From positions 1 to 64,000 of IMG/VR virus record IMGVR_UViG_3300030339_000003: a stretch of DNA of 64,000 nt. The stretch is one strand, 5' to 3'. Positions 7,811 through 53,711 of the stretch are shown here, one piece after another (the stretch's first letter is position 1; every line of letters begins with the position of its first letter). A program made the position numbers and the translations under genes. A model generated the notes under the pieces. That model was not told where the DNA came from and made no database searches. It saw only the letters and a program-made list of their open reading frames with translations.

Positions 7811-7862
7811 ACTAGAGTAAATTAAGATGGGATTAATCTACTCTAGTAATGTAGGGTTGAGA
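7811..7862 (-). promoter_or_regulatory. phiKZ-type early promoter plus 5' hairpin
   Basis: TCAACCC-TACATTAC (core 7846-7853); 15-bp stem at 7811-7847. Confidence 0.7.
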
Positions 7863-26728: not shown

Positions 26729-27442
26729 TTAACCTTTAATTAATTGTTGGAAACGTGTTGAGATAATTGCATAATACAAATAAGGTGGGACGTTCTCATA
26801 AGCGCCTAATGAGAAACCTTCATTAACTTCTACCAACCCCCACTGACCGTTGATTAATCCCATATCAAAACTTCCTACGGTATAACCCCTTACCCGTAAT
26901 AACGTCATGATATCTTTAATAATAGGAATTAATTCTTTTGATCCATCAGAACAATAAAACGTATCGTTTTTGTAATACACTCGGCACTCGTCGGTAATGC
27001 TAGCTACGGCAGCAGAATAGATTTCAACCTTTGGACTAAATGCATCAAAGTAAAGGTTAGAAGTCGAATGCGCAATGTAACCGGTAAACAGTTTTAACAC
27101 TTTCACTGGCTTAATAAAACGAGGCAAAGTGGATTCGTCTAACTTACCCATCGTTGTTTTAATGATATCGCGGTGTAAATATTGCTTGAGGTAATCGGGA
27201 TAGTCGTTAGGGATAGGTAAATCTTTCTTATACTTTCTTAACGTGTGTTTAACAAAGTCAATATCGCCTGCCGCAAAAGCTAATTTATCAGGCAAAGACT
27301 TCCGAATGATTTCTTTACTCCCCACTAATTCAACAATAAGTTTTAATTCAGCAACATGAGCTTGGATATAATCCTTTAGTATTTGTTCTTCTTTATCTAA
27401 CTTACCTGTACCATGTTGTTCTAACCAAACCATTTTCCACAT
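26729..27442 (-). CDS. ATP-grasp domain protein (DUF4343/R2K-like)
   Basis: DYP..L..YLHR, FIKP...KLFTG, ECRVY, FDMG..W.LVEVNEGFSLGAY. Confidence 0.8.
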   Translation of the reverse strand: MWKMVWLEQHGTGKLDKEEQILKDYIQAHVAELKLIVELVGSKEIIRKSLPDKLAFAAGDIDFVKHTLRKYKKDLPIPNDYPDYLKQYLHRDIIKTTMGKLDESTLPRFIKPVKVLKLFTGYIAHSTSNLYFDAFSPKVEIYSAAVASITDECRVYYKNDTFYCSDGSKELIPIIKDIMTLLRVRGYTVGSFDMGLINGQWGLVEVNEGFSLGAYENVPPYLYYAIISTRFQQLIKG

Positions 27443-27484: not shown

Positions 27485-27916
27485 TTATTCGCAATCACGA
27501 ACGTGTTCGTAAGTAAAGATGACTTCTTTACCAAGCCAATTAGCCAACTCAGTATTAATCTTAATTAAATCAAAACGAGTAGGGTCGTACACCAAAGACA
27601 TGTGCAATAACAACGTAGAATAAGAATGAGTATAACCTGCGTCTGTTAAGCGTCTGAATTCCTGTTGTAAGCCCACGCTATGCAGTTCTGCTACAATTGC
27701 ATCGCCCAGTTCTTTAAACCCAATGATGGTGGCTTTAAAGAGCACGTGCGAGTTAATATCACAACGTGGTTCATCACATTCTGATTTATCATACATCAGC
27801 GTAATATGAAACGGATAAGTGGTAGCGGGCTGTATGCTCAGATCGGTTAATGCTGTTTTTAATTGCTTTTCGGTTTCTTCAAGTAGGTTAACCGATATGT
27901 ACCCCAGCTTTGGCAT
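27485..27916 (-). CDS. 2H phosphodiesterase, anti-CBASS Acb1 (T4 gp57B)-like
   Basis: Two Hx[T/S] motifs, FHITLMY and LHMSL; 143 aa. Confidence 0.7.
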   Translation of the reverse strand: MPKLGYISVNLLEETEKQLKTALTDLSIQPATTYPFHITLMYDKSECDEPRCDINSHVLFKATIIGFKELGDAIVAELHSVGLQQEFRRLTDAGYTHSYSTLLLHMSLVYDPTRFDLIKINTELANWLGKEVIFTYEHVRDCE

Positions 27917-33512: not shown

Positions 33513-33542
33513 TAAGTAAAGGGGCGGCCGCCCCTTTACTTA
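33513..33542. terminator. Perfect 30-bp palindrome, probable terminator
   Basis: TAAGTAAAGGGGCGGCCGCCCCTTTACTTA. Confidence 0.75.
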
Positions 33543-33552
33543 GTGCTTAACG

Positions 33553-33819
33553 TTATTTGATTTGTTTTAACAAAGCAGGCATAATGTTTTCAACTGATGT
33601 TTGGTAGTCTATTAAAGTATTGGTAGACAGCAGACGGTAACTTACATCGTCTGGTTTAACAATAATGGAAGCAAAAATAGAGCCCATGTGTTTTAAAGAA
33701 TAAACAACCGAACCATCACCGGTGTCTTTATTTTTATAACCGGTGACCAAAGTTGTTTGACCTTCTACTAAATTCAGAGAGTCGTCTTTAAAATAGCATA
33801 GCAGTTTCAGTTCTGGCAT
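33553..33819 (-). CDS. Hypothetical protein
   Basis: 88-aa ORF. Confidence 0.65.
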   Translation of the reverse strand: MPELKLLCYFKDDSLNLVEGQTTLVTGYKNKDTGDGSVVYSLKHMGSIFASIIVKPDDVSYRLLSTNTLIDYQTSVENIMPALLKQIK

Positions 33820-34507
33820 GAGTATTACCTACTTGAAGCTTAAAGATAAGGTTGTCCATCTTAGACTGGTTCACTAAGTATGAAACTTTCTTTTTGTTGT
33901 TGTTTACCAATTGGTTCATTTTGTTACGGAATTGTTTGACAGTAGCCACTTTCCCGTTAACAGTGTACATGTTCCAATTGCCTTTGGTAAGCTTAACGTA
34001 TTTGCTAATTTTTGCGTTGTCGTTACCTTTCAATATCTTTTCGGCACCATACAAGCCAACGAACCAACTCATATACACATCGCCGTCTGATACTGCCCTT
34101 TTGGTTTTCCTTTCAAGGTAACTGCGATTTTCTGCTAAACCTGCTGCTCCGATTAATATATTGGCTCGCTTATCGTGAACAGAACTCTTAGCAGACAATC
34201 CTAAGCGCTTAGCGTGTAATTGCACATCGTTACGCCATTGGCGGTTTGTGTATTGCATTGCCCCTTTAACATTAGAATGAGGATTAATAGTGTTTTGCCC
34301 AAAACGAGATTCTTTAAGCAAAACTGCACTTACAAGTTCGGCGGATTCACCGGTGAGACTTTCGGCCTCAATAACATATTTTTCTATTTTTGCATAAGCC
34401 TTTGCATCGGCTTTTGAAAGTGGTTGAACAGAATAGCTGGCTAGTGCAGCGCCCATCCCCACCATCATTATTAACATTCCCAAAATAAAAGATTTGATCG
34501 TAGACAT
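33788..34507 (-). CDS. Lytic transglycosylase (SLT, phiKZ gp144-like catalytic domain) with signal peptide
   Basis: Sec-type N-terminus ending ALA-S; KESRF catalytic Glu, GAMQ, DVYMSWFVG. Confidence 0.8.
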   Translation of the reverse strand: MSTIKSFILGMLIMMVGMGAALASYSVQPLSKADAKAYAKIEKYVIEAESLTGESAELVSAVLLKESRFGQNTINPHSNVKGAMQYTNRQWRNDVQLHAKRLGLSAKSSVHDKRANILIGAAGLAENRSYLERKTKRAVSDGDVYMSWFVGLYGAEKILKGNDNAKISKYVKLTKGNWNMYTVNGKVATVKQFRNKMNQLVNNNKKKVSYLVNQSKMDNLIFKLQVGNTHARTETAMLF

Positions 34508-34525
34508 ACGTCCTCCGTTGTTTGA

Positions 34526-34575
34526 CCAGGTGTAACATCATAACTACTGTTACACCTAGATAATATAGGTTTATT
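34526..34575 (-). promoter_or_regulatory. phiKZ-type early promoter plus 5' hairpin
   Basis: TAAACC-TATATTAT (core 34560-34567), then 12-bp stem CTAGGTGTAACA/TGTTACACCTGG. Confidence 0.7.
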
Positions 34576-37042
34576 AATGTATTGACGTATTCGTATTCAC
34601 TTCTCCACTAATAGTAAGACCGTCATAACGAATACCAATGATGTTCGGGTTAGGGAACATATTGGTCTGTGATGCATAATGCGAAACCATGATTAACTGT
34701 TGATGGTCTTTATTAACCATTAACTGTTGCACGTAATTAAAGAAACGACTGCGGTTAATTTCATCTAAGTAAACACCCACTTCGTCCATAATTAAAGGGA
34801 ACCAGTCAGGTTTATAACGCATGCCAACTTTACGGCTTACGAAATTGATTATCTCGGATTCACCCGCACTACATTCTGATGCATCGCTGTTAGAGGTATT
34901 CAAACCATTAATGACAGGAAACTTGTACGTCAGATCGCCATTGGCCTTATTACAGGGTTTGAGTAATAAGGGTATGTTGCTGAATTCCTTAATGTTAGCG
35001 TTAACATTACCGCAAAAAGTTTTAATGAAATCTAGCATGAGTTTTCCGATTAGCCCTTTATTCGGACAAAGCCCATCCATTGATAATTTCACCACTTTAA
35101 TACGACGTTTTAAACGTTTGATATCCGCATCGATTGACTCAACAACACTGGTCAATGATTTGTTACGGATGATCTCCGACATGATGTTATTCTTTTCTTT
35201 GGTACGTTCACTCACACCTATGTTGATGTGGTTTTTCAAACGGTAACGGTATTGGTCTTTAACGCACACACGGTAATTATTTAACAGCGCCTGGATCGAA
35301 GTACGTGTTTGTTCGTATTGTTCGATTTGTGTTAACAATAATTTTTGACGTGTAAGTTTACGTGTAAATAGACGTAAAGATTCGTTGTACCATATAACCT
35401 TACCTTCGGTGTGTTTAATCTTTTCGATTATCCCACCCATATAATTTTGGTTTATAACGTTTAAGCGTTCTAACAAACCTTCCTTTTCATCCATTAAAGG
35501 ATTGATTGCTTGTAAAGTTTGGTTATAAGTTAACAGTAAATTGATACCATTCATTAACCCACTTGATTCAACTTTACCAATTTCGTACTCTTTAACAATA
35601 TCAAACAGGGGTGCCGATGTACTACGTTGTTGTCTAATAAACGACATGATAGACTGCATCGTATTAAACCATTCGGCATCGTTCTCAATTAACTTGGTAT
35701 ACTTTTCAATGTCAGTATCGTATTGTTCCATTGAACGAGTTAATCCAGTGATATCAATTTGTAGATCTTTGATATCTTTAGGACTGATGCCCACTTTAAA
35801 GACGTGTGTGCAATCAGGACACGTTATATCAGTAGCCCCCAAGTAATGCTTCAACTTATGTTGCTTGGCTTCTAACAGCGCGCGAGTCTTGTGTTGTTCG
35901 TTAGACAACTTATCACGTAACTCGATATACTTGGTATAAGCGCCCCCAGTTAATTCAGGTGTTGAAGATATTTCTACACGGTACAAGTATTGTTTGAATT
36001 CATCCAATGCATTGACGTAACCTTTATAAAGATTAAATTGCTCCATCAACACGGGGTGTTCTGCTAACAGTGACTTTAACTGGTCGGCTTTGGTATTGTG
36101 ACGTTTAAGTTCAGACATAATCAAACTGAGACGTTTTTCAATTTGTTTAGGGTCTTGCTTAATATCTTGCATTGAAACATGTTCACTCAATTCAGCCATT
36201 AAGCCGGAATAGTAAGATTGCTTTTCTTTAACAATCACTAATGAACGTTCATTAATTTCAATGGTTTGACGTAATGAACTTAACGTGTAGCCTTCTGGGT
36301 TAGCGATAGATGTTTTTAATGCAGAGCCTAACAACGTTAACAGTTGTTGACGCATATCCAATAATCCAGGTTGCTCTAATGAACTTGACAGTTCGCCCAA
36401 CAATACCAGCCCTTGGCGTATTTCGTCATCAAGTTTGTTTGCATTAAGTAACAAATCAGTTTCACTCATGGATTGTAAATTTTCTAAATTAACCTTTTCC
36501 ATTGTGTAACGACCAATCTGATTTTTCAATGCTCCACGTAAAGAGTTATACTCGTCTTTTAGTTTATAGAACACTCCCATAACGTAATCGACATTATTTG
36601 GGTACAATGACATAATGTATTCTTTACGACGAGCTGGAGACATATTTGTAAACAAATCAATAGGGAACATGCCACTCAAAGTACGACACGTTGTTTGGTC
36701 AACACCAAAATGTGTTTCTGCTAACATCTTTTGTGCTGTTGCGGTTCCGCCCTTATTAAGGTTCTCGCCGTCTATCTCAAATTTGTGAATAGCTTCTTTA
36801 CCCATAATAGAAGTCATCACGTATTCTTTACCTTGCCACCGTATCGTAATTTGTTTACGACCACCGTCTTCAAACTTACTGGTTTCTGGTGGGAACGGAT
36901 GCATTTCTTTAATTGTTGTACTTTTACCGCTTCCGTTTGTACTGATGAATAAATTAACATCAGTAAGCTTTTTAAGTTCTAATAAGTGCACACCTGACGT
37001 TTTTAAAGGAATAAATCCTTCGAGTAAAAATGATGTAATCAT
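34574..37042 (-). CDS. sbcC: SbcC/Rad50-like ATPase (phiKZ gp165-like)
   Basis: NGSGKS Walker A, coiled coils, CPDC zinc hook, SAGE signature, MDE Walker B, VSH. Confidence 0.85.
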   Translation of the reverse strand: MITSFLLEGFIPLKTSGVHLLELKKLTDVNLFISTNGSGKSTTIKEMHPFPPETSKFEDGGRKQITIRWQGKEYVMTSIMGKEAIHKFEIDGENLNKGGTATAQKMLAETHFGVDQTTCRTLSGMFPIDLFTNMSPARRKEYIMSLYPNNVDYVMGVFYKLKDEYNSLRGALKNQIGRYTMEKVNLENLQSMSETDLLLNANKLDDEIRQGLVLLGELSSSLEQPGLLDMRQQLLTLLGSALKTSIANPEGYTLSSLRQTIEINERSLVIVKEKQSYYSGLMAELSEHVSMQDIKQDPKQIEKRLSLIMSELKRHNTKADQLKSLLAEHPVLMEQFNLYKGYVNALDEFKQYLYRVEISSTPELTGGAYTKYIELRDKLSNEQHKTRALLEAKQHKLKHYLGATDITCPDCTHVFKVGISPKDIKDLQIDITGLTRSMEQYDTDIEKYTKLIENDAEWFNTMQSIMSFIRQQRSTSAPLFDIVKEYEIGKVESSGLMNGINLLLTYNQTLQAINPLMDEKEGLLERLNVINQNYMGGIIEKIKHTEGKVIWYNESLRLFTRKLTRQKLLLTQIEQYEQTRTSIQALLNNYRVCVKDQYRYRLKNHINIGVSERTKEKNNIMSEIIRNKSLTSVVESIDADIKRLKRRIKVVKLSMDGLCPNKGLIGKLMLDFIKTFCGNVNANIKEFSNIPLLLKPCNKANGDLTYKFPVINGLNTSNSDASECSAGESEIINFVSRKVGMRYKPDWFPLIMDEVGVYLDEINRSRFFNYVQQLMVNKDHQQLIMVSHYASQTNMFPNPNIIGIRYDGLTISGEVNTNTSIH

Positions 37043-51668: not shown

Positions 51669-52106
51669 GTGACTGATATTAAATCAACTGCTGAAGCAGC
51701 ACCCGAAGAAGTCAGAACTGTAATTGAAAGTAAACTGTCTACTTTTCATTATGTCATTTGGGCTGCTGTAATTATTTTGACTATCGCAAGTGTGTCAATC
51801 AGCTACGTTGCATTGAAACGCAGTACACTTGATAACGAGTCCATCCGATCTCTTAATGAAATATCATTAAGAATGAAAACATCGCTGGACACGCTGACCA
51901 AACTCAATAAAGACAACCTTGAGTTTAACGCCAACAAAAATGCGTATATTGCTCAGCAAAATACTCAGACGGATTTTAATTATGATGACTTGGTTAAAAA
52001 GTACGGCGCTCCTTCCACTGCTCTTAATCCTGATGACGGCAGTAATAAGTGGCTGTTCTCACAACCCGACGATCAACGAAGCAACAAACCGACTGGAGAT
52101 AAATAA
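51669..52106 (+). CDS. Inner-membrane spanin (Rz-like)
   Basis: GTG start after AAGGAG; one TM followed by a coiled coil; overlaps the lipoprotein gene. Confidence 0.7.
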   Translation: MTDIKSTAEAAPEEVRTVIESKLSTFHYVIWAAVIILTIASVSISYVALKRSTLDNESIRSLNEISLRMKTSLDTLTKLNKDNLEFNANKNAYIAQQNTQTDFNYDDLVKKYGAPSTALNPDDGSNKWLFSQPDDQRSNKPTGDK

Positions 52107-52455
52107 ACAACAAATCGTTATCGGAACATACGTGGACCAAATGACTAACCTTACCGATTCCATGTCGGCAATCCCTGTTCAATTGGATATTGACAATAAC
52201 CCACCGCCTACTCCGGTTCAAACCGATTTGGATGCCTTTCTAAAAGAGAACGATTGCACGGTAGTACCGACCGATCAAAAGGACGGGTGTTATGTGCGTA
52301 CGCGTTTAGTGTTAATTAAAATGGCGAGACGTATTGATTATTTGAGTACCAATAATTATGTCGCCAAAGATACCATTAAACATTTACAAACTAACGTTAA
52401 ATCTATCATCACAGGTTTACAAGATTTAAAGACCGGTGCAGCGTTAGCAAAATAA
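51982..52455 (+). CDS. Outer-membrane lipoprotein spanin (Rz1-like)
   Basis: MMTWLKSTALLPLLLILMTAVISG-C lipobox; Pro-rich stretch; starts in the +1 frame inside the i-spanin. Confidence 0.75.
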   Translation: MMTWLKSTALLPLLLILMTAVISGCSHNPTINEATNRLEINKQQIVIGTYVDQMTNLTDSMSAIPVQLDIDNNPPPTPVQTDLDAFLKENDCTVVPTDQKDGCYVRTRLVLIKMARRIDYLSTNNYVAKDTIKHLQTNVKSIITGLQDLKTGAALAK

Positions 52456-52563: not shown

Positions 52564-53106
52564 TTACTTTACTTCTGCAGTCGTTACCCACATTTGTTCC
52601 ACAGGATCCCATGTACTGGACTCAGTAGGACGTTTAGAAGGCACACGAACATAACCTGCTGCTGTAAGGTCGGTAGTATCAACAAGTGTTACAAAAGAAC
52701 CACTGGCGGAATTCCACCAAAAATAACTTGTACCGTCGGCACTCATTCCGCTACCCGAGATCTTTGATAACAACAGATCTTTAGCACGGTCTTTTAATGT
52801 AGTCGTAGAAAGAATGGTACTAATGGTTTTGTTGGCATTAGAGAAAGACATAGCGCAAATAGTAACGCCCACAGTCATAATAAAGAAATGCCACTCACTA
52901 GGCCACCCAGTTCCACGTTCAATTGAAATACGAACAGTAACCGCATCCATGTAAGCAATGTAACACATTGTAAACACCGATACGACACCGCTGATGTAAC
53001 GAATGATGTTACCCCAAATACCAAATACGCGAGCTTCAAACCCCGGCTCTCTTGAACTTAAAGGAGCCGTGGGTGAATCGTCAGGTGTGTCTTGTTCAGT
53101 TGTCAT
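52564..53106 (-). CDS. Two-TM membrane protein, putative holin
   Basis: Two TM helices; adjacent to spanins; TAATG-coupled to RuvC at 53106. Confidence 0.5.
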   Translation of the reverse strand: MTTEQDTPDDSPTAPLSSREPGFEARVFGIWGNIIRYISGVVSVFTMCYIAYMDAVTVRISIERGTGWPSEWHFFIMTVGVTICAMSFSNANKTISTILSTTTLKDRAKDLLLSKISGSGMSADGTSYFWWNSASGSFVTLVDTTDLTAAGYVRVPSKRPTESSTWDPVEQMWVTTAEVK

Positions 53107-53711
53107 TATATTCTTAGTCCGGTTTTCCAATCTATAAGGATAATTTCGGCCTGGTATAACCCAATAGCGACTGAGTCAATAGAGTGTTCATCTAACTGAG
53201 ACAAATCGATTCCATTAGCATCCAGGTTCTCATAAGCCATGACTCCTATTTTTACATCTTCTTTCTGCGTACCAGAGAAATCAGCACCAACAGTTGCTTT
53301 AGCTAACTTAGGTAATACGTAGGAAAGATGTAAAGGTCGTTCAGCTTTGTTACAAGCTTCTCTTAATAATGCAACGGCTTGTATAAGTTGCTTAAACGTA
53401 CCAGGAGATACACCCAGAAAGTTATCTTCACAAATAGCCACATCCGGCTCATAAATGTTAGCAATACTTTTTAATGCACGAGCAAGTCCATAAGTGCGCG
53501 CTAAAACTCCAGTACCATTTATAGTGTCGTCAAATTGTTCAGGAATGTCAAATTTAACTTGTTCACCAAAAATGGTATTAGAATAAATCAATTTAGGTTT
53601 AACATCTTTAATGACGTCAACATCAATGATGCTAACGCCCATATTAGTGGTAGAAGGGTCAACGCTCATGACCCTTATTTTACCGTCGTTTACTGCATAA
53701 CGAGAAAACAT
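53106..53711 (-). CDS. ruvC: Holliday junction resolvase
   Basis: SVDPS..NMG, ICE, K..V, DEHSIDSVAIG. Confidence 0.8.
   Translation of the reverse strand: MFSRYAVNDGKIRVMSVDPSTTNMGVSIIDVDVIKDVKPKLIYSNTIFGEQVKFDIPEQFDDTINGTGVLARTYGLARALKSIANIYEPDVAICEDNFLGVSPGTFKQLIQAVALLREACNKAERPLHLSYVLPKLAKATVGADFSGTQKEDVKIGVMAYENLDANGIDLSQLDEHSIDSVAIGLYQAEIILIDWKTGLRI

What the first reader, a model, noticed from the sequence alone, without database searches (positions are those of the whole stretch)
33788..34575. Secreted gp144-type lytic transglycosylase under an early promoter, far from the lysis genes
Seen: a signal peptide in place of the peptidoglycan-binding domain of phiKZ gp144-type endolysins, an early core with a 12-bp leader hairpin directly upstream, and a location about 17 kb from the spanins and holin. 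Inference: holin-independent export early in infection for cell-wall remodelling (such as cell bulging for the nucleus) or exclusion, rather than lysis.
Basis: partly seen in the sequence, partly recalled or inferred. Interest (0 to 1): 0.6.

Follow-up and report, generated by a model that had tools for sequence, protein, structure and literature searches.

The report
Secreted early cell-wall cutter of jumbo phage
A nucleus-forming giant phage carries, besides its normal lysis enzyme and its tail enzyme, a third cell-wall-cutting enzyme with an export signal and the same promoter type as its earliest genes. This suggests the phage acts on the host wall well before lysis, but the timing and the function have not been measured.

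Summary
Window 33788-34507 (-) encodes a 239-aa protein whose residues 37-201 are a phiKZ gp144-type lytic transglycosylase (LT) domain with the catalytic Glu kept. A classic Sec signal peptide replaces gp144's peptidoglycan-binding domain. All 50 relatives examined, down to 27% identity, have the same signal peptide.

Sixty nt upstream lies one of exactly 25 copies of a strong genome-wide motif. The other copies precede the nuclear-shell protein, PhuZ, an RNA polymerase subunit, GroEL and small unknown genes, so it is the predicted virion-RNA-polymerase early promoter. A 12-bp hairpin follows it. Promoter and position are conserved in six other phages.

The spanins lie 17.2 kb away. The genome (231 kb, peat metagenome) also has an EL gp188-type modular endolysin and a gp181-type tail lysin, so this is a third muralytic enzyme.

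Most likely it is an accessory periplasmic LT, exported without a holin and made early. A role in wall remodelling rather than lysis is plausible but untested. No RNA data exist, and a second secreted endolysin is not excluded.

Verdict: new variant of a known kind, moderately interesting.

The parts
34551..34578 (-). Predicted early (virion RNA polymerase type) promoter: T/A-rich upstream part, CC-TATATTA core (34567-34561) and a conserved downstream TCTAGGTGTA-like part. It starts 2 nt after the stop codon of the upstream SbcC-like gene.
   Evidence: One of 25 genome-wide sites. Leave-one-out PWM score 26.5, with no non-site position scoring 10 or more. Other copies precede the nuclear shell protein, PhuZ, an RNAP beta-like subunit and GroEL. 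A motif-like site sits at the same place upstream of the orthologue in 6 other phages. The general rule for RNAP-encoding jumbo phages is stated in PMC7598289.
34526..34559 (-). Leader hairpin: 12-bp stem (one G-U pair), 10-nt loop. Its 5' arm overlaps the conserved downstream part of the promoter. There is no U-tract after it, and the ribosome-binding site is left free.
   Evidence: -16.9 kcal/mol over 50 nt, z -3.9, the most stable of the 25 promoter leaders. Hairpins also lie between promoter and start codon in Joad and Miami, and directly upstream of the gene in PCH45 and PhiEaH1.
34511..34516 (-). Shine-Dalgarno GGAGGA, 3 nt before the ATG
   Evidence: Read directly from the sequence.
34439..34507 (-). 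Signal peptide, residues 1-23: n-region with K5, hydrophobic core, A-L-A cleavage motif before S24
   Evidence: A23 is invariant and S24 nearly invariant in alignments A1 and A3. The same layout occurs in all 50 relatives inspected. The AF2 model has pLDDT below 50 for residues 10-27.
33788..34438 (-). Mature secreted lytic transglycosylase: gp144-type catalytic domain (about residues 37-201, catalytic Glu66 at 34310-34312) plus a C-terminal helix (about residues 190-227) that extends past the end of the gp144 alignment (query residue 201, near the C-terminus of gp144). Includes the stop codon.
33553..33819 (-). Co-transcribed 88-aa protein with no signal peptide. Its start overlaps the LT gene's end by 32 nt. 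The family is conserved next to the LT gene as far as Pseudomonas phage OBP. Function unknown.
   Evidence: The model is a beta-sheet plus a C-terminal helix with pLDDT 70.7 and has no significant PDB match.
33518..33536 (-). Terminator-like GC hairpin closing the two-gene operon
   Evidence: A terminator is annotated at the same place in Klebsiella phage Miami.
51669..52106 (+). i-spanin (context only): GTG start with AAGGAG, one N-terminal TM segment
51982..52455 (+). o-spanin (context only): lipoprotein signal with a lipobox Cys, overlapping the i-spanin gene as in phiKZ gp141/141.1
   Evidence: The phiKZ arrangement is described in PMC12894885.
52564..53130 (-). Candidate holin (context only): 188 aa, two TM segments, phrog_14084 of unknown function. 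It follows the gp139/gp140-like genes where phiKZ has its lysis cassette. No endolysin gene is in this cluster.

Best explanation
The gene encodes an accessory periplasmic lytic transglycosylase (LT) of the phiKZ gp144 structural type.

Proposed mechanism: the phage's virion RNA polymerase transcribes it from a dedicated early-type promoter. The transcript covers two genes, begins with a stable stem-loop and ends at a terminator after the 88-aa gene. The protein enters the Sec pathway through a cleavable signal peptide and is released into the periplasm by signal peptidase I. It therefore reaches the peptidoglycan without a holin and before lysis. There it cuts glycan strands, loosening or re-modelling the sacculus. 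Final lysis is left to the cytoplasmic EL gp188-type endolysin together with the holin candidate and the spanins.

Shown here:
- the catalytic fold and catalytic Glu;
- the signal-peptide architecture across the family;
- membership of the promoter family;
- the operon layout;
- the presence of two other muralytic genes.

Inferred:
- early timing, by analogy with phiKZ-like phages and from the other genes that carry the motif;
- cleavage and periplasmic release;
- enzymatic activity;
- the physiological purpose. Candidates are wall loosening for cell enlargement around the phage nucleus, sustaining wall turnover after host shut-off, or pre-weakening the wall before lysis.
For: Fold and active site. 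E66 and the G-x-M-Q motif are invariant.

Signal peptide: small residues at -3 and -1 in the target and all 50 relatives at 27-97% identity, including phages OBP, N1M2, Yubaba, Joad, Miami, pEt-SU and PhiEaH1.

Promoter:
- 25 sites, all on one strand and intergenic, cleanly separated from background.
- Downstream genes include the nuclear shell protein, PhuZ, an RNAP beta-like subunit, GroEL and small unknown genes, with no structural gene among the 20 tested by PHROGs.
- The review states that such motifs were confirmed as early promoters in every RNAP-encoding jumbo phage that has been profiled.
- The best or near-best motif match in each 8-17 kb locus lies 60-70 nt before the orthologue in L030, Joad, Miami, pEt-SU, OBP and N1M2.

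A separate lysis enzyme exists:
- An EL gp188-type protein (two PG_binding_1-like repeats plus a catalytic domain, 42% identical to EL gp188) lies beside a virion-type RNAP gene.
- A gp181-type tail protein is also present.
- Both gp188-type and secreted gp144-type genes co-occur in Joad, Miami, pEt-SU, PCH45 and PhiEaH1.
- phiKZ, whose gp144 is the endolysin, has no gp188-type gene.
- In PCH45 the essential 'lytic transglycosylase' gp152 is the gp188-type gene by position.
Against: - No transcript data exist. The source is a peat metagenome and no RNA run holds the sequence.
- The target's site is at the low end of the promoter scores, and its T-rich upstream part is imperfect.
- The upstream SbcC-like gene is co-directional, with only a U-less hairpin in between, so middle or late read-through is possible.
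- In PCH45 and PhiEaH1 the orthologue has no motif directly upstream. The nearest motif lies 2.7-5.4 kb upstream in a run of small genes.
- The target's hydrophobic core is fairly rich in Gly, Ala and Met (8 of 19 residues weakly hydrophobic), so an uncleaved, SAR-like anchor is not fully excluded for this member.
- An active soluble LT released early could be harmful to the host cell, so some restraint on its activity would be needed.
- phiKZ lacks a secreted copy, and from my recollection (no paper checked) it still bulges its host.
Confidence: 0.5

Rival explanations
1. It is a second, secretory endolysin that works at lysis. It is exported ahead of time through Sec, either kept tethered by an uncleaved SAR-like anchor or kept inactive in the energised envelope. 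It is unleashed when the holin candidate depolarises the membrane, and acts redundantly or synergistically with the gp188-type enzyme.
For: - gp144 itself is the phiKZ endolysin.
- Several orthologues are annotated 'endolysin'.
- The spanin/holin-candidate cluster contains no endolysin gene.
- Secreted and SAR endolysins are an established class (from my own knowledge of P1 Lyz, phage 21 R, fOg44 Lys44; N4).
- The target's hydrophobic core is fairly Gly/Ala/Met-rich.
- Early synthesis would be harmless if the enzyme were held inactive.
Against: - Small residues at -3 and -1 followed by Ser are conserved in all relatives, and most cores are short and rich in Leu, Ile and Phe. This is typical of cleaved signal peptides, not SAR anchors.
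- The gene is not next to any holin-like gene in any of the loci seen.
- It carries the promoter type of the earliest genes.
- A canonical cytoplasmic endolysin is present in every genome checked that has this gene. That endolysin is the one reported essential in PCH45.
Confidence: 0.25
2. It is a periplasmic competition or exclusion factor. By altering the sacculus, or by producing anhydro-muropeptides, it hinders tail penetration or DNA entry of superinfecting phages, or changes host envelope signalling.
For: - Predicted early expression and a periplasmic location fit known exclusion proteins such as T4 Spackle (from my own knowledge).
- The gene is dispensable in some lineages: none was detected in EL.
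Against: - No known exclusion system uses a muralytic enzyme. Cutting peptidoglycan would be expected to help, not hinder, an incoming tail.
- Nothing in the locus points to it. The neighbours are DNA repair and replication genes.
Confidence: 0.08
3. The motif is not specific to early transcription, or the gene is mainly transcribed by read-through or from a late start. In that case timing carries no special meaning and the protein is simply one of several lysis-phase wall hydrolases.
For: - Only motif evidence for timing exists.
- Some jumbo-phage genes are expressed continuously from both early and late promoters.
- A TATG (the phiKZ late start motif) lies in the hairpin loop at 34539-34542.
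- There is no terminator with a U-tract after the upstream gene.
Against: - The dedicated motif at the same distance from the start codon is conserved in seven phages spanning 27-63% protein identity.
- The TATG is not conserved in Joad or Miami, and a 4-mer is expected by chance.
Confidence: 0.15
4. It is a virion component, like phiKZ gp144, which also sits as a wedge at the neck.
For: phiKZ gp144 is built into the neck. The gene lies near baseplate and tail genes.
Against: - A Sec signal peptide sends the protein out of the cytoplasm where virions assemble.
- It was not among the proteins found in RisingSun lysate, whereas the gp188-type protein gp231 was.
- It has the early-type promoter.
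Confidence: 0.02

Closest known systems
phiKZ gp144 endolysin (PDB 3bkh)
   Same: Same catalytic fold and E-S catalytic motif. It is the best sequence and structure match.
   Different: - gp144 has an N-terminal peptidoglycan-binding domain and no signal peptide.
- It sits in the spanin-holin-regulator-endolysin cassette, needs the holin, and is also a neck component.
- The protein here has a signal peptide, a C-terminal helix extension and an early-type promoter. It lies 17 kb from the spanins.
Secreted and SAR endolysins (P1 Lyz, phage 21 R, N4, fOg44 Lys44)
   Same: A phage muralytic enzyme exported by the host Sec system independently of a holin.
   Different: - Those are late genes in or near lysis cassettes. 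SAR types keep an uncleaved Gly/Ala-rich anchor. They are the phage's only endolysin.
- Here the cleavage motif is conserved, the promoter is of the early type, and a canonical endolysin co-exists.
- The comparison with those proteins rests on my own knowledge, not on a test here.
Host endolytic lytic transglycosylase MltE/EmtA and specialised LTs of secretion systems (VirB1, P19 and similar)
   Same: Small periplasmic SLT-domain enzymes that open the sacculus locally without lysing the cell. MltE is the next-best structural match.
   Different: MltE is an outer-membrane lipoprotein. The protein here has no lipobox Cys and should be soluble. No partner machine is known for it.
EL gp188 / OBP gp279-type modular endolysins
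   Same: Muralytic enzymes of the same phage group. One is encoded in the same genome.
   Different: They have a different catalytic family (best PDB match 9udh), PG-binding repeats, no signal peptide, and sit beside virion RNA polymerase genes.

Membership tests
SLT / gp144-type lytic transglycosylase catalytic domain | Significant sequence match to the family model and to gp144 | tested here: met
   PF01464 scores 22.2 bits against a cut-off of 21.3. phrog_4067 scores 2.6e-37. gp144 matches at E 6e-7 over 165 residues.
SLT / gp144-type lytic transglycosylase catalytic domain | Catalytic Glu in the E-S motif, and the G-x-M-Q motif | tested here: met
   E66-S67 aligns with the gp144 E-S motif. 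E66, S67, G82 and Q85 are invariant in A1 and A3.
SLT / gp144-type lytic transglycosylase catalytic domain | Goose-lysozyme-like all-helical fold | tested here: met
   The AF2 model has pLDDT 84.9. Foldseek's best match is 3bkh (E 1.8e-5, rmsd 2.5 over 168 columns), followed by MltE, MltC, MltF and Slt.
SLT / gp144-type lytic transglycosylase catalytic domain | Produces 1,6-anhydro-MurNAc ends | not testable with these tools
   Needs a muropeptide analysis.
phiKZ gp144-type endolysin (as a lysis-cassette member) | N-terminal PG_binding_1 domain | tested here: not met
   No Pfam hit outside SLT. Residues 1-36 are a signal peptide plus a linker.
phiKZ gp144-type endolysin (as a lysis-cassette member) | Encoded next to the spanins, holin and lysis regulator | tested here: not met
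   The spanins are at 51.7-52.5 kb and this gene is at 33.8-34.5 kb. The gp139/gp140 homologues flank the spanin cluster, which has no endolysin.
phiKZ gp144-type endolysin (as a lysis-cassette member) | Cytoplasmic accumulation and holin-dependent release | tested here: not met
   A predicted Sec signal peptide is present. Localisation itself was not measured.
Sec (SPase I) cleavable signal peptide | Basic n-region, hydrophobic h-region, small residues at -3 and -1 | tested here: met
   K5, an 18-residue core, and A21-L-A23 before S24. The same layout is in all 50 relatives. No SignalP run was available, so this was judged by rule and by conservation.
Sec (SPase I) cleavable signal peptide | Actual cleavage and periplasmic location | not testable with these tools
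   Needs fractionation, N-terminal sequencing or PhoA fusions.
SAR endolysin | Uncleaved, weakly hydrophobic (Gly/Ala/Ser-rich) N-terminal anchor without a cleavage motif | tested here: not met
   The cleavage motif is conserved family-wide. Most relatives have cores rich in Leu, Ile and Phe. The target's own core is 8/19 weakly hydrophobic, which alone is inconclusive.
SAR endolysin | Paired with a (pin)holin in a late lysis cassette | tested here: not met
   The neighbours are the SbcC-like ATPase, an 88-aa protein, a HAD-like protein (as the Miami homologue is annotated) and the NAD ligase, in seven phages.
[quoted passage not shown] | Strongly conserved AT-rich motif repeated upstream of many operons, oriented with them | tested here: met
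   25 sites, all on the minus strand and intergenic, 17-103 nt before the called start for 23 of them, cleanly separated from background.
[quoted passage not shown] | Found before hallmark early genes (nuclear shell, non-virion RNAP) and not before structural genes | tested here: met
   The nuclear shell protein, PhuZ, an RNAP beta-like subunit and GroEL follow motif sites. None of the 20 first downstream genes tested is structural. Whether the RNAP subunit is the non-virion one was not tested.
[quoted passage not shown] | Transcription start a few nt downstream, active in the first minutes without new protein synthesis | not testable with these tools
   No RNA run holds this phage.

The most novel reading that the evidence does not exclude
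Many nucleus-forming jumbo phages export, from the first minutes of infection, their own soluble lytic transglycosylase into the host periplasm. It re-models the sacculus so the cell can enlarge around the phage nucleus, or keep its wall plastic after host shut-off. This would be an early periplasmic effector class distinct from tail lysins and endolysins. It may work with the conserved, co-transcribed 88-aa protein.
Probability: 0.25. Interest if true: 0.75.

Novelty: new variant of a known kind. Interest (0 to 1): 0.55.

Why it matters
Phage wall hydrolases are normally sorted into two jobs: entry (tail lysins) and exit (endolysins). This genome and at least six cultured relatives (Joad, Miami, pEt-SU, PCH45, PhiEaH1 shown here; OBP by its published gp279 endolysin) carry both of those plus a third enzyme. 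The third has its own export signal and, in seven related loci (this genome, a metagenomic relative and five of those cultured phages), an early-type promoter site.

If it acts early, it would show that nucleus-forming phages manipulate the host envelope during the infection, not just at its ends. It would also give a concrete gene to test for the cell-shape changes seen in such infections. In addition it sharpens annotation: these genes are often labelled 'endolysin', while the likely true endolysin is often labelled 'hypothetical protein'.

The papers searched and read do not discuss the signal peptide or the promoter of this family.

Tried and rejected
- Near-identical DNA search in cultured phages found no match.
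- Public sequencing runs: only DNA metagenomes (peat, biofilm, food, freshwater) and no RNA.
- No Phage_lysozyme family hit in the genome.
- A self-protein search found no paralogue.
- No secreted gp144-type gene was detected in phage EL. This is weak evidence, because the search had no positive control in that genome.
- The first strict DNA pattern for the promoter in relatives was too narrow and gave few sites. A weight matrix worked better.
- OBP and N1M2 whole records could not be pattern-searched because they are not held.
- The PCH45 Tn-seq supplementary table is not held, so the essentiality of the PCH45 orthologue (180th CDS) is unknown. The text names only gp152.
- 88-aa partner: no Pfam or PHROG hit for the window's copy, and only a weak PHROG of unknown function for OBP's copy. 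There was no Atlas lead. No significant PDB fold match was found; the weak top rows were Ugi-like inhibitors (E 0.7) and Ivy (E 1.9), too weak to use.
- The word search plus the family scans settled the family.
- A TATG in the hairpin loop was considered as a late start and set aside, because it is not conserved.
Full report
WHAT IS THERE

The window is the first 64 kb of a 231,366-bp virus record with direct terminal repeats, 39.5% G+C, recovered from a peat metagenome. [quoted passage not shown] Its closest named relatives are Erwinia phages Joad and RisingSun (about 50% protein identity for this gene) and Klebsiella phage Miami.

The finding is the ORF at 33788-34507 on the minus strand, 239 aa, with a GGAGGA ribosome-binding site.

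THE PROTEIN

Residues 37-201 are a phiKZ gp144-type lytic transglycosylase (LT) domain.
- Pfam SLT is just above its cut-off.
- phrog_4067 scores 2.6e-37.
- gp144 is the only solved relative by sequence (E about 6e-7), with Glu66 on its catalytic E-S motif.
- An AlphaFold2 model (pLDDT 84.9) has gp144 (3bkh) as its best Foldseek match, followed by the endolytic host enzyme MltE.

Where gp144 has its peptidoglycan-binding domain, this protein has residues 1-23. These carry a basic residue, an 18-residue hydrophobic core and Ala-Leu-Ala before Ser24.

I collected 48 relatives by word and profile search (12 with the single protein, further ones with the profile), plus Joad gp104 and the PhiEaH1 protein. 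They include Pseudomonas phage OBP, Klebsiella phage N1M2 and Serratia phage Yubaba, down to 27% identity. Every one starts with the same n/h/c layout and small residues at -3 and -1, usually followed by Ser. Conservation of the cleavage motif argues for a cleaved Sec signal peptide rather than a SAR anchor. For this one member, whose core is rather rich in Gly, Ala and Met, I put that at about 80:20.

A C-terminal helix (about residues 190-227) extends past the end of the gp144 alignment (query residue 201, near the C-terminus of gp144).

THE PROMOTER AND THE HAIRPIN

Two nt after the stop codon of the upstream SbcC-like gene begins a motif with the core CC-TATATTA (34567-34561). Searching the genome for the core revealed a family with a T-rich stretch upstream and a TTAGGTGTA-like stretch downstream.

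A weight matrix finds exactly 25 sites. All are on the minus strand and intergenic, 17-103 nt before a crudely called minus-strand start for 23 of them; for the other two the longest-ORF call runs over the site. With the target left out of the matrix it still scores 26.5. No other of the 462,646 positions in the genome reaches 10.

The genes directly behind other copies are the nuclear-shell protein, PhuZ, an RNA polymerase beta-like subunit, GroEL, an ATPase, and small proteins of unknown function. None of the 20 tested is structural.

The review PMC7598289 states that such a motif can be found in every RNA-polymerase-encoding jumbo phage. Wherever transcripts were profiled, it proved to be the early promoter read by the virion polymerase, centred near -10. 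So 'early core' is a fair name, but it is inferred and not measured.

The hairpin is real. The arms are at 34559-34548 and 34537-34526, giving 12 bp with one G-U pair and a 10-nt loop. It is the most stable of the 25 leaders (z -3.9), and about a third of the others also start with a stem-loop. It has no U-tract and leaves the ribosome-binding site free. Its 5' arm overlaps the conserved downstream part of the promoter, so depending on the true start site only part of it may be in the RNA.

A terminator-like hairpin follows the next gene, at 33518-33536. The unit is therefore promoter, LT gene, 88-aa gene, terminator.

CONSERVATION

The order baseplate gene, SbcC-like ATPase, (small genes), secreted LT, about 85-aa protein..., NAD ligase, RNase H recurs in these phages and contigs:
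- Joad
- Miami
- pEt-SU
- OBP
- N1M2
- a 232-kb metagenomic relative

In each of these loci the best match to this genome's promoter matrix lies 60-70 nt before the LT start codon. The one exception is N1M2, where it is the second-best match. Scores: 30.7 in the close relative, 19.6 in Joad, 19.0 in pEt-SU, 9.4 in OBP, 9.1 in N1M2 and 6.9 in Miami.

In PCH45 and PhiEaH1 the gene sits elsewhere, in a run of small genes 2.7-5.4 kb downstream of a motif-like site, with only a hairpin directly upstream.

THE REST OF THE LYSIS EQUIPMENT

The spanins are at 51669-52106 and 51982-52455. They overlap as in phiKZ, and the o-spanin has a lipobox. They lie 17.2 kb from the LT gene.

Homologues of phiKZ gp139 and gp140 lie next to them. 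A 2-TM protein of unknown family occupies the place where phiKZ begins its lysis cassette. No endolysin is in this cluster. phiKZ's cassette of spanins, holin gp142, regulator gp143 and endolysin gp144 is described in PMC12894885.

The new fact is that the genome has two more muralytic genes.
- At G000 174829-175698 (-) lies a 289-aa protein with two PG_binding_1-like repeats and a transglycosidase domain. It is 42% identical to EL gp188, the characterised endolysin of phage EL. As in EL, it sits directly after a virion-type RNA polymerase gene.
- At G000 181696-189183 (+) lies a gp181-type giant tail protein.

How the two enzyme types are distributed across phages:

| Phage(s) | Secreted gp144-type | gp188-type |
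|---|---|---|
| Joad, Miami, pEt-SU, PCH45, PhiEaH1 | present | present |
| EL | none detected | present |
| phiKZ | gp144 is the endolysin | none |

In the PCH45 Tn-seq preprint the essential 'putative lytic transglycosylase' gp152 is the gp188-type gene. I established this by counting CDSs, a count confirmed by PhuZ coming out as gp187. The secreted one is the 180th CDS and is not mentioned. In RisingSun lysate the gp188-type protein (gp231) was detected and the secreted one was not.

INTERPRETATION

Entry is covered by the tail protein and exit by the gp188-type enzyme with the spanins. The secreted gp144-type enzyme is therefore a third, accessory activity. It reaches the wall without a holin and, by its promoter, early.

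What it does there is open. The options are wall loosening for cell enlargement, keeping wall turnover going after host shut-off, or pre-weakening the wall before lysis.

The main rival is a second, secretory endolysin held in check until the membrane is depolarised. Early transcription would not contradict that if the enzyme were tethered or inactive, but the conserved cleavage site does. Read-through or late starts cannot be excluded without RNA data.

The bulging link is weak. phiKZ has no secreted copy, and from my recollection (no paper checked here) it still bulges its host.

LIMITS

- No SignalP run was available. The signal peptide was judged by rule and by conservation.
- Gene calls outside the window are crude longest-ORF calls.
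- The promoter class rests on analogy.
- The 88-aa partner's fold model is only moderate (pLDDT 70.7) and matched nothing significant.
- Read laying, complex prediction and the large representative search were not used, for the reasons given under Tried and rejected.

Noticed in passing
G000:C1:174829-175698 (-), outside the window (L005:1213-2082): EL gp188-type modular endolysin: two PG_binding_1-like repeats plus a catalytic domain like PDB 9udh. It lies directly downstream of a virion-type RNA polymerase beta fragment, as in phage EL. Its orthologues are labelled 'hypothetical protein' in many cultured relatives, including Miami, PCH45 and EL itself.
   Followed up: yes
G000:C1:181696-189183 (+), outside the window: Giant (about 2,570-aa open frame) gp181-type tail protein. 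It matches phrog_3201 over nearly its whole length, including the region that carries the lysin domain in that family.
   Followed up: partly
window 33553-33819 (-): 88-aa protein co-transcribed with the LT gene, overlapping it by 32 nt. Its family stays next to the LT gene from this phage to Pseudomonas phage OBP (16-30% identity). It has no signal peptide and a predicted beta-sheet plus C-terminal helix. No known family or fold was matched.
   Followed up: partly
window 27485-27916 (-): Acb1 anti-CBASS nuclease homologue (PF23474, E 8e-11). Next to it is an R2K-clade ATP-grasp protein (26729-27442). The same pair is in the 232-kb relative (L030).
   Followed up: partly
whole genome; window sites at 7853, 19724, 23728, 26052, 34567: All 25 predicted early promoters are on the minus strand, as are 219 of 260 crude ORF calls. 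About a third of them are followed at once by a stem-loop. The site at 7853 has a 14-bp stem that starts at the same offset as the target's, and precedes only a 43-aa ORF.
   Followed up: partly
window 34539-34542 (-): A TATG, the four-base late-promoter start motif of phiKZ, lies in the loop of the leader hairpin. It is not conserved in Joad or Miami and is probably chance.
   Followed up: partly
window 52564-53130 (-): 188-aa protein with two TM segments (phrog_14084, unknown function). It lies convergent with the spanin pair and directly after the gp139/gp140-like genes. It is a holin candidate and is unlike the single-TM phiKZ holin gp142.
   Followed up: partly
G000:C1:212368-213993 (-), outside the window (L009): A GroEL-type chaperonin gene lies directly behind one of the early-type promoters, recalling the phage EL chaperonin.
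   Followed up: no
L024:7944-8603 (PCH45) and L016:3899-4597 (PhiEaH1): In these two phages the secreted LT gene has left the SbcC-ligase locus and sits among small genes near PhuZ. It still has a GC-rich hairpin just before its ribosome-binding site.
   Followed up: partly
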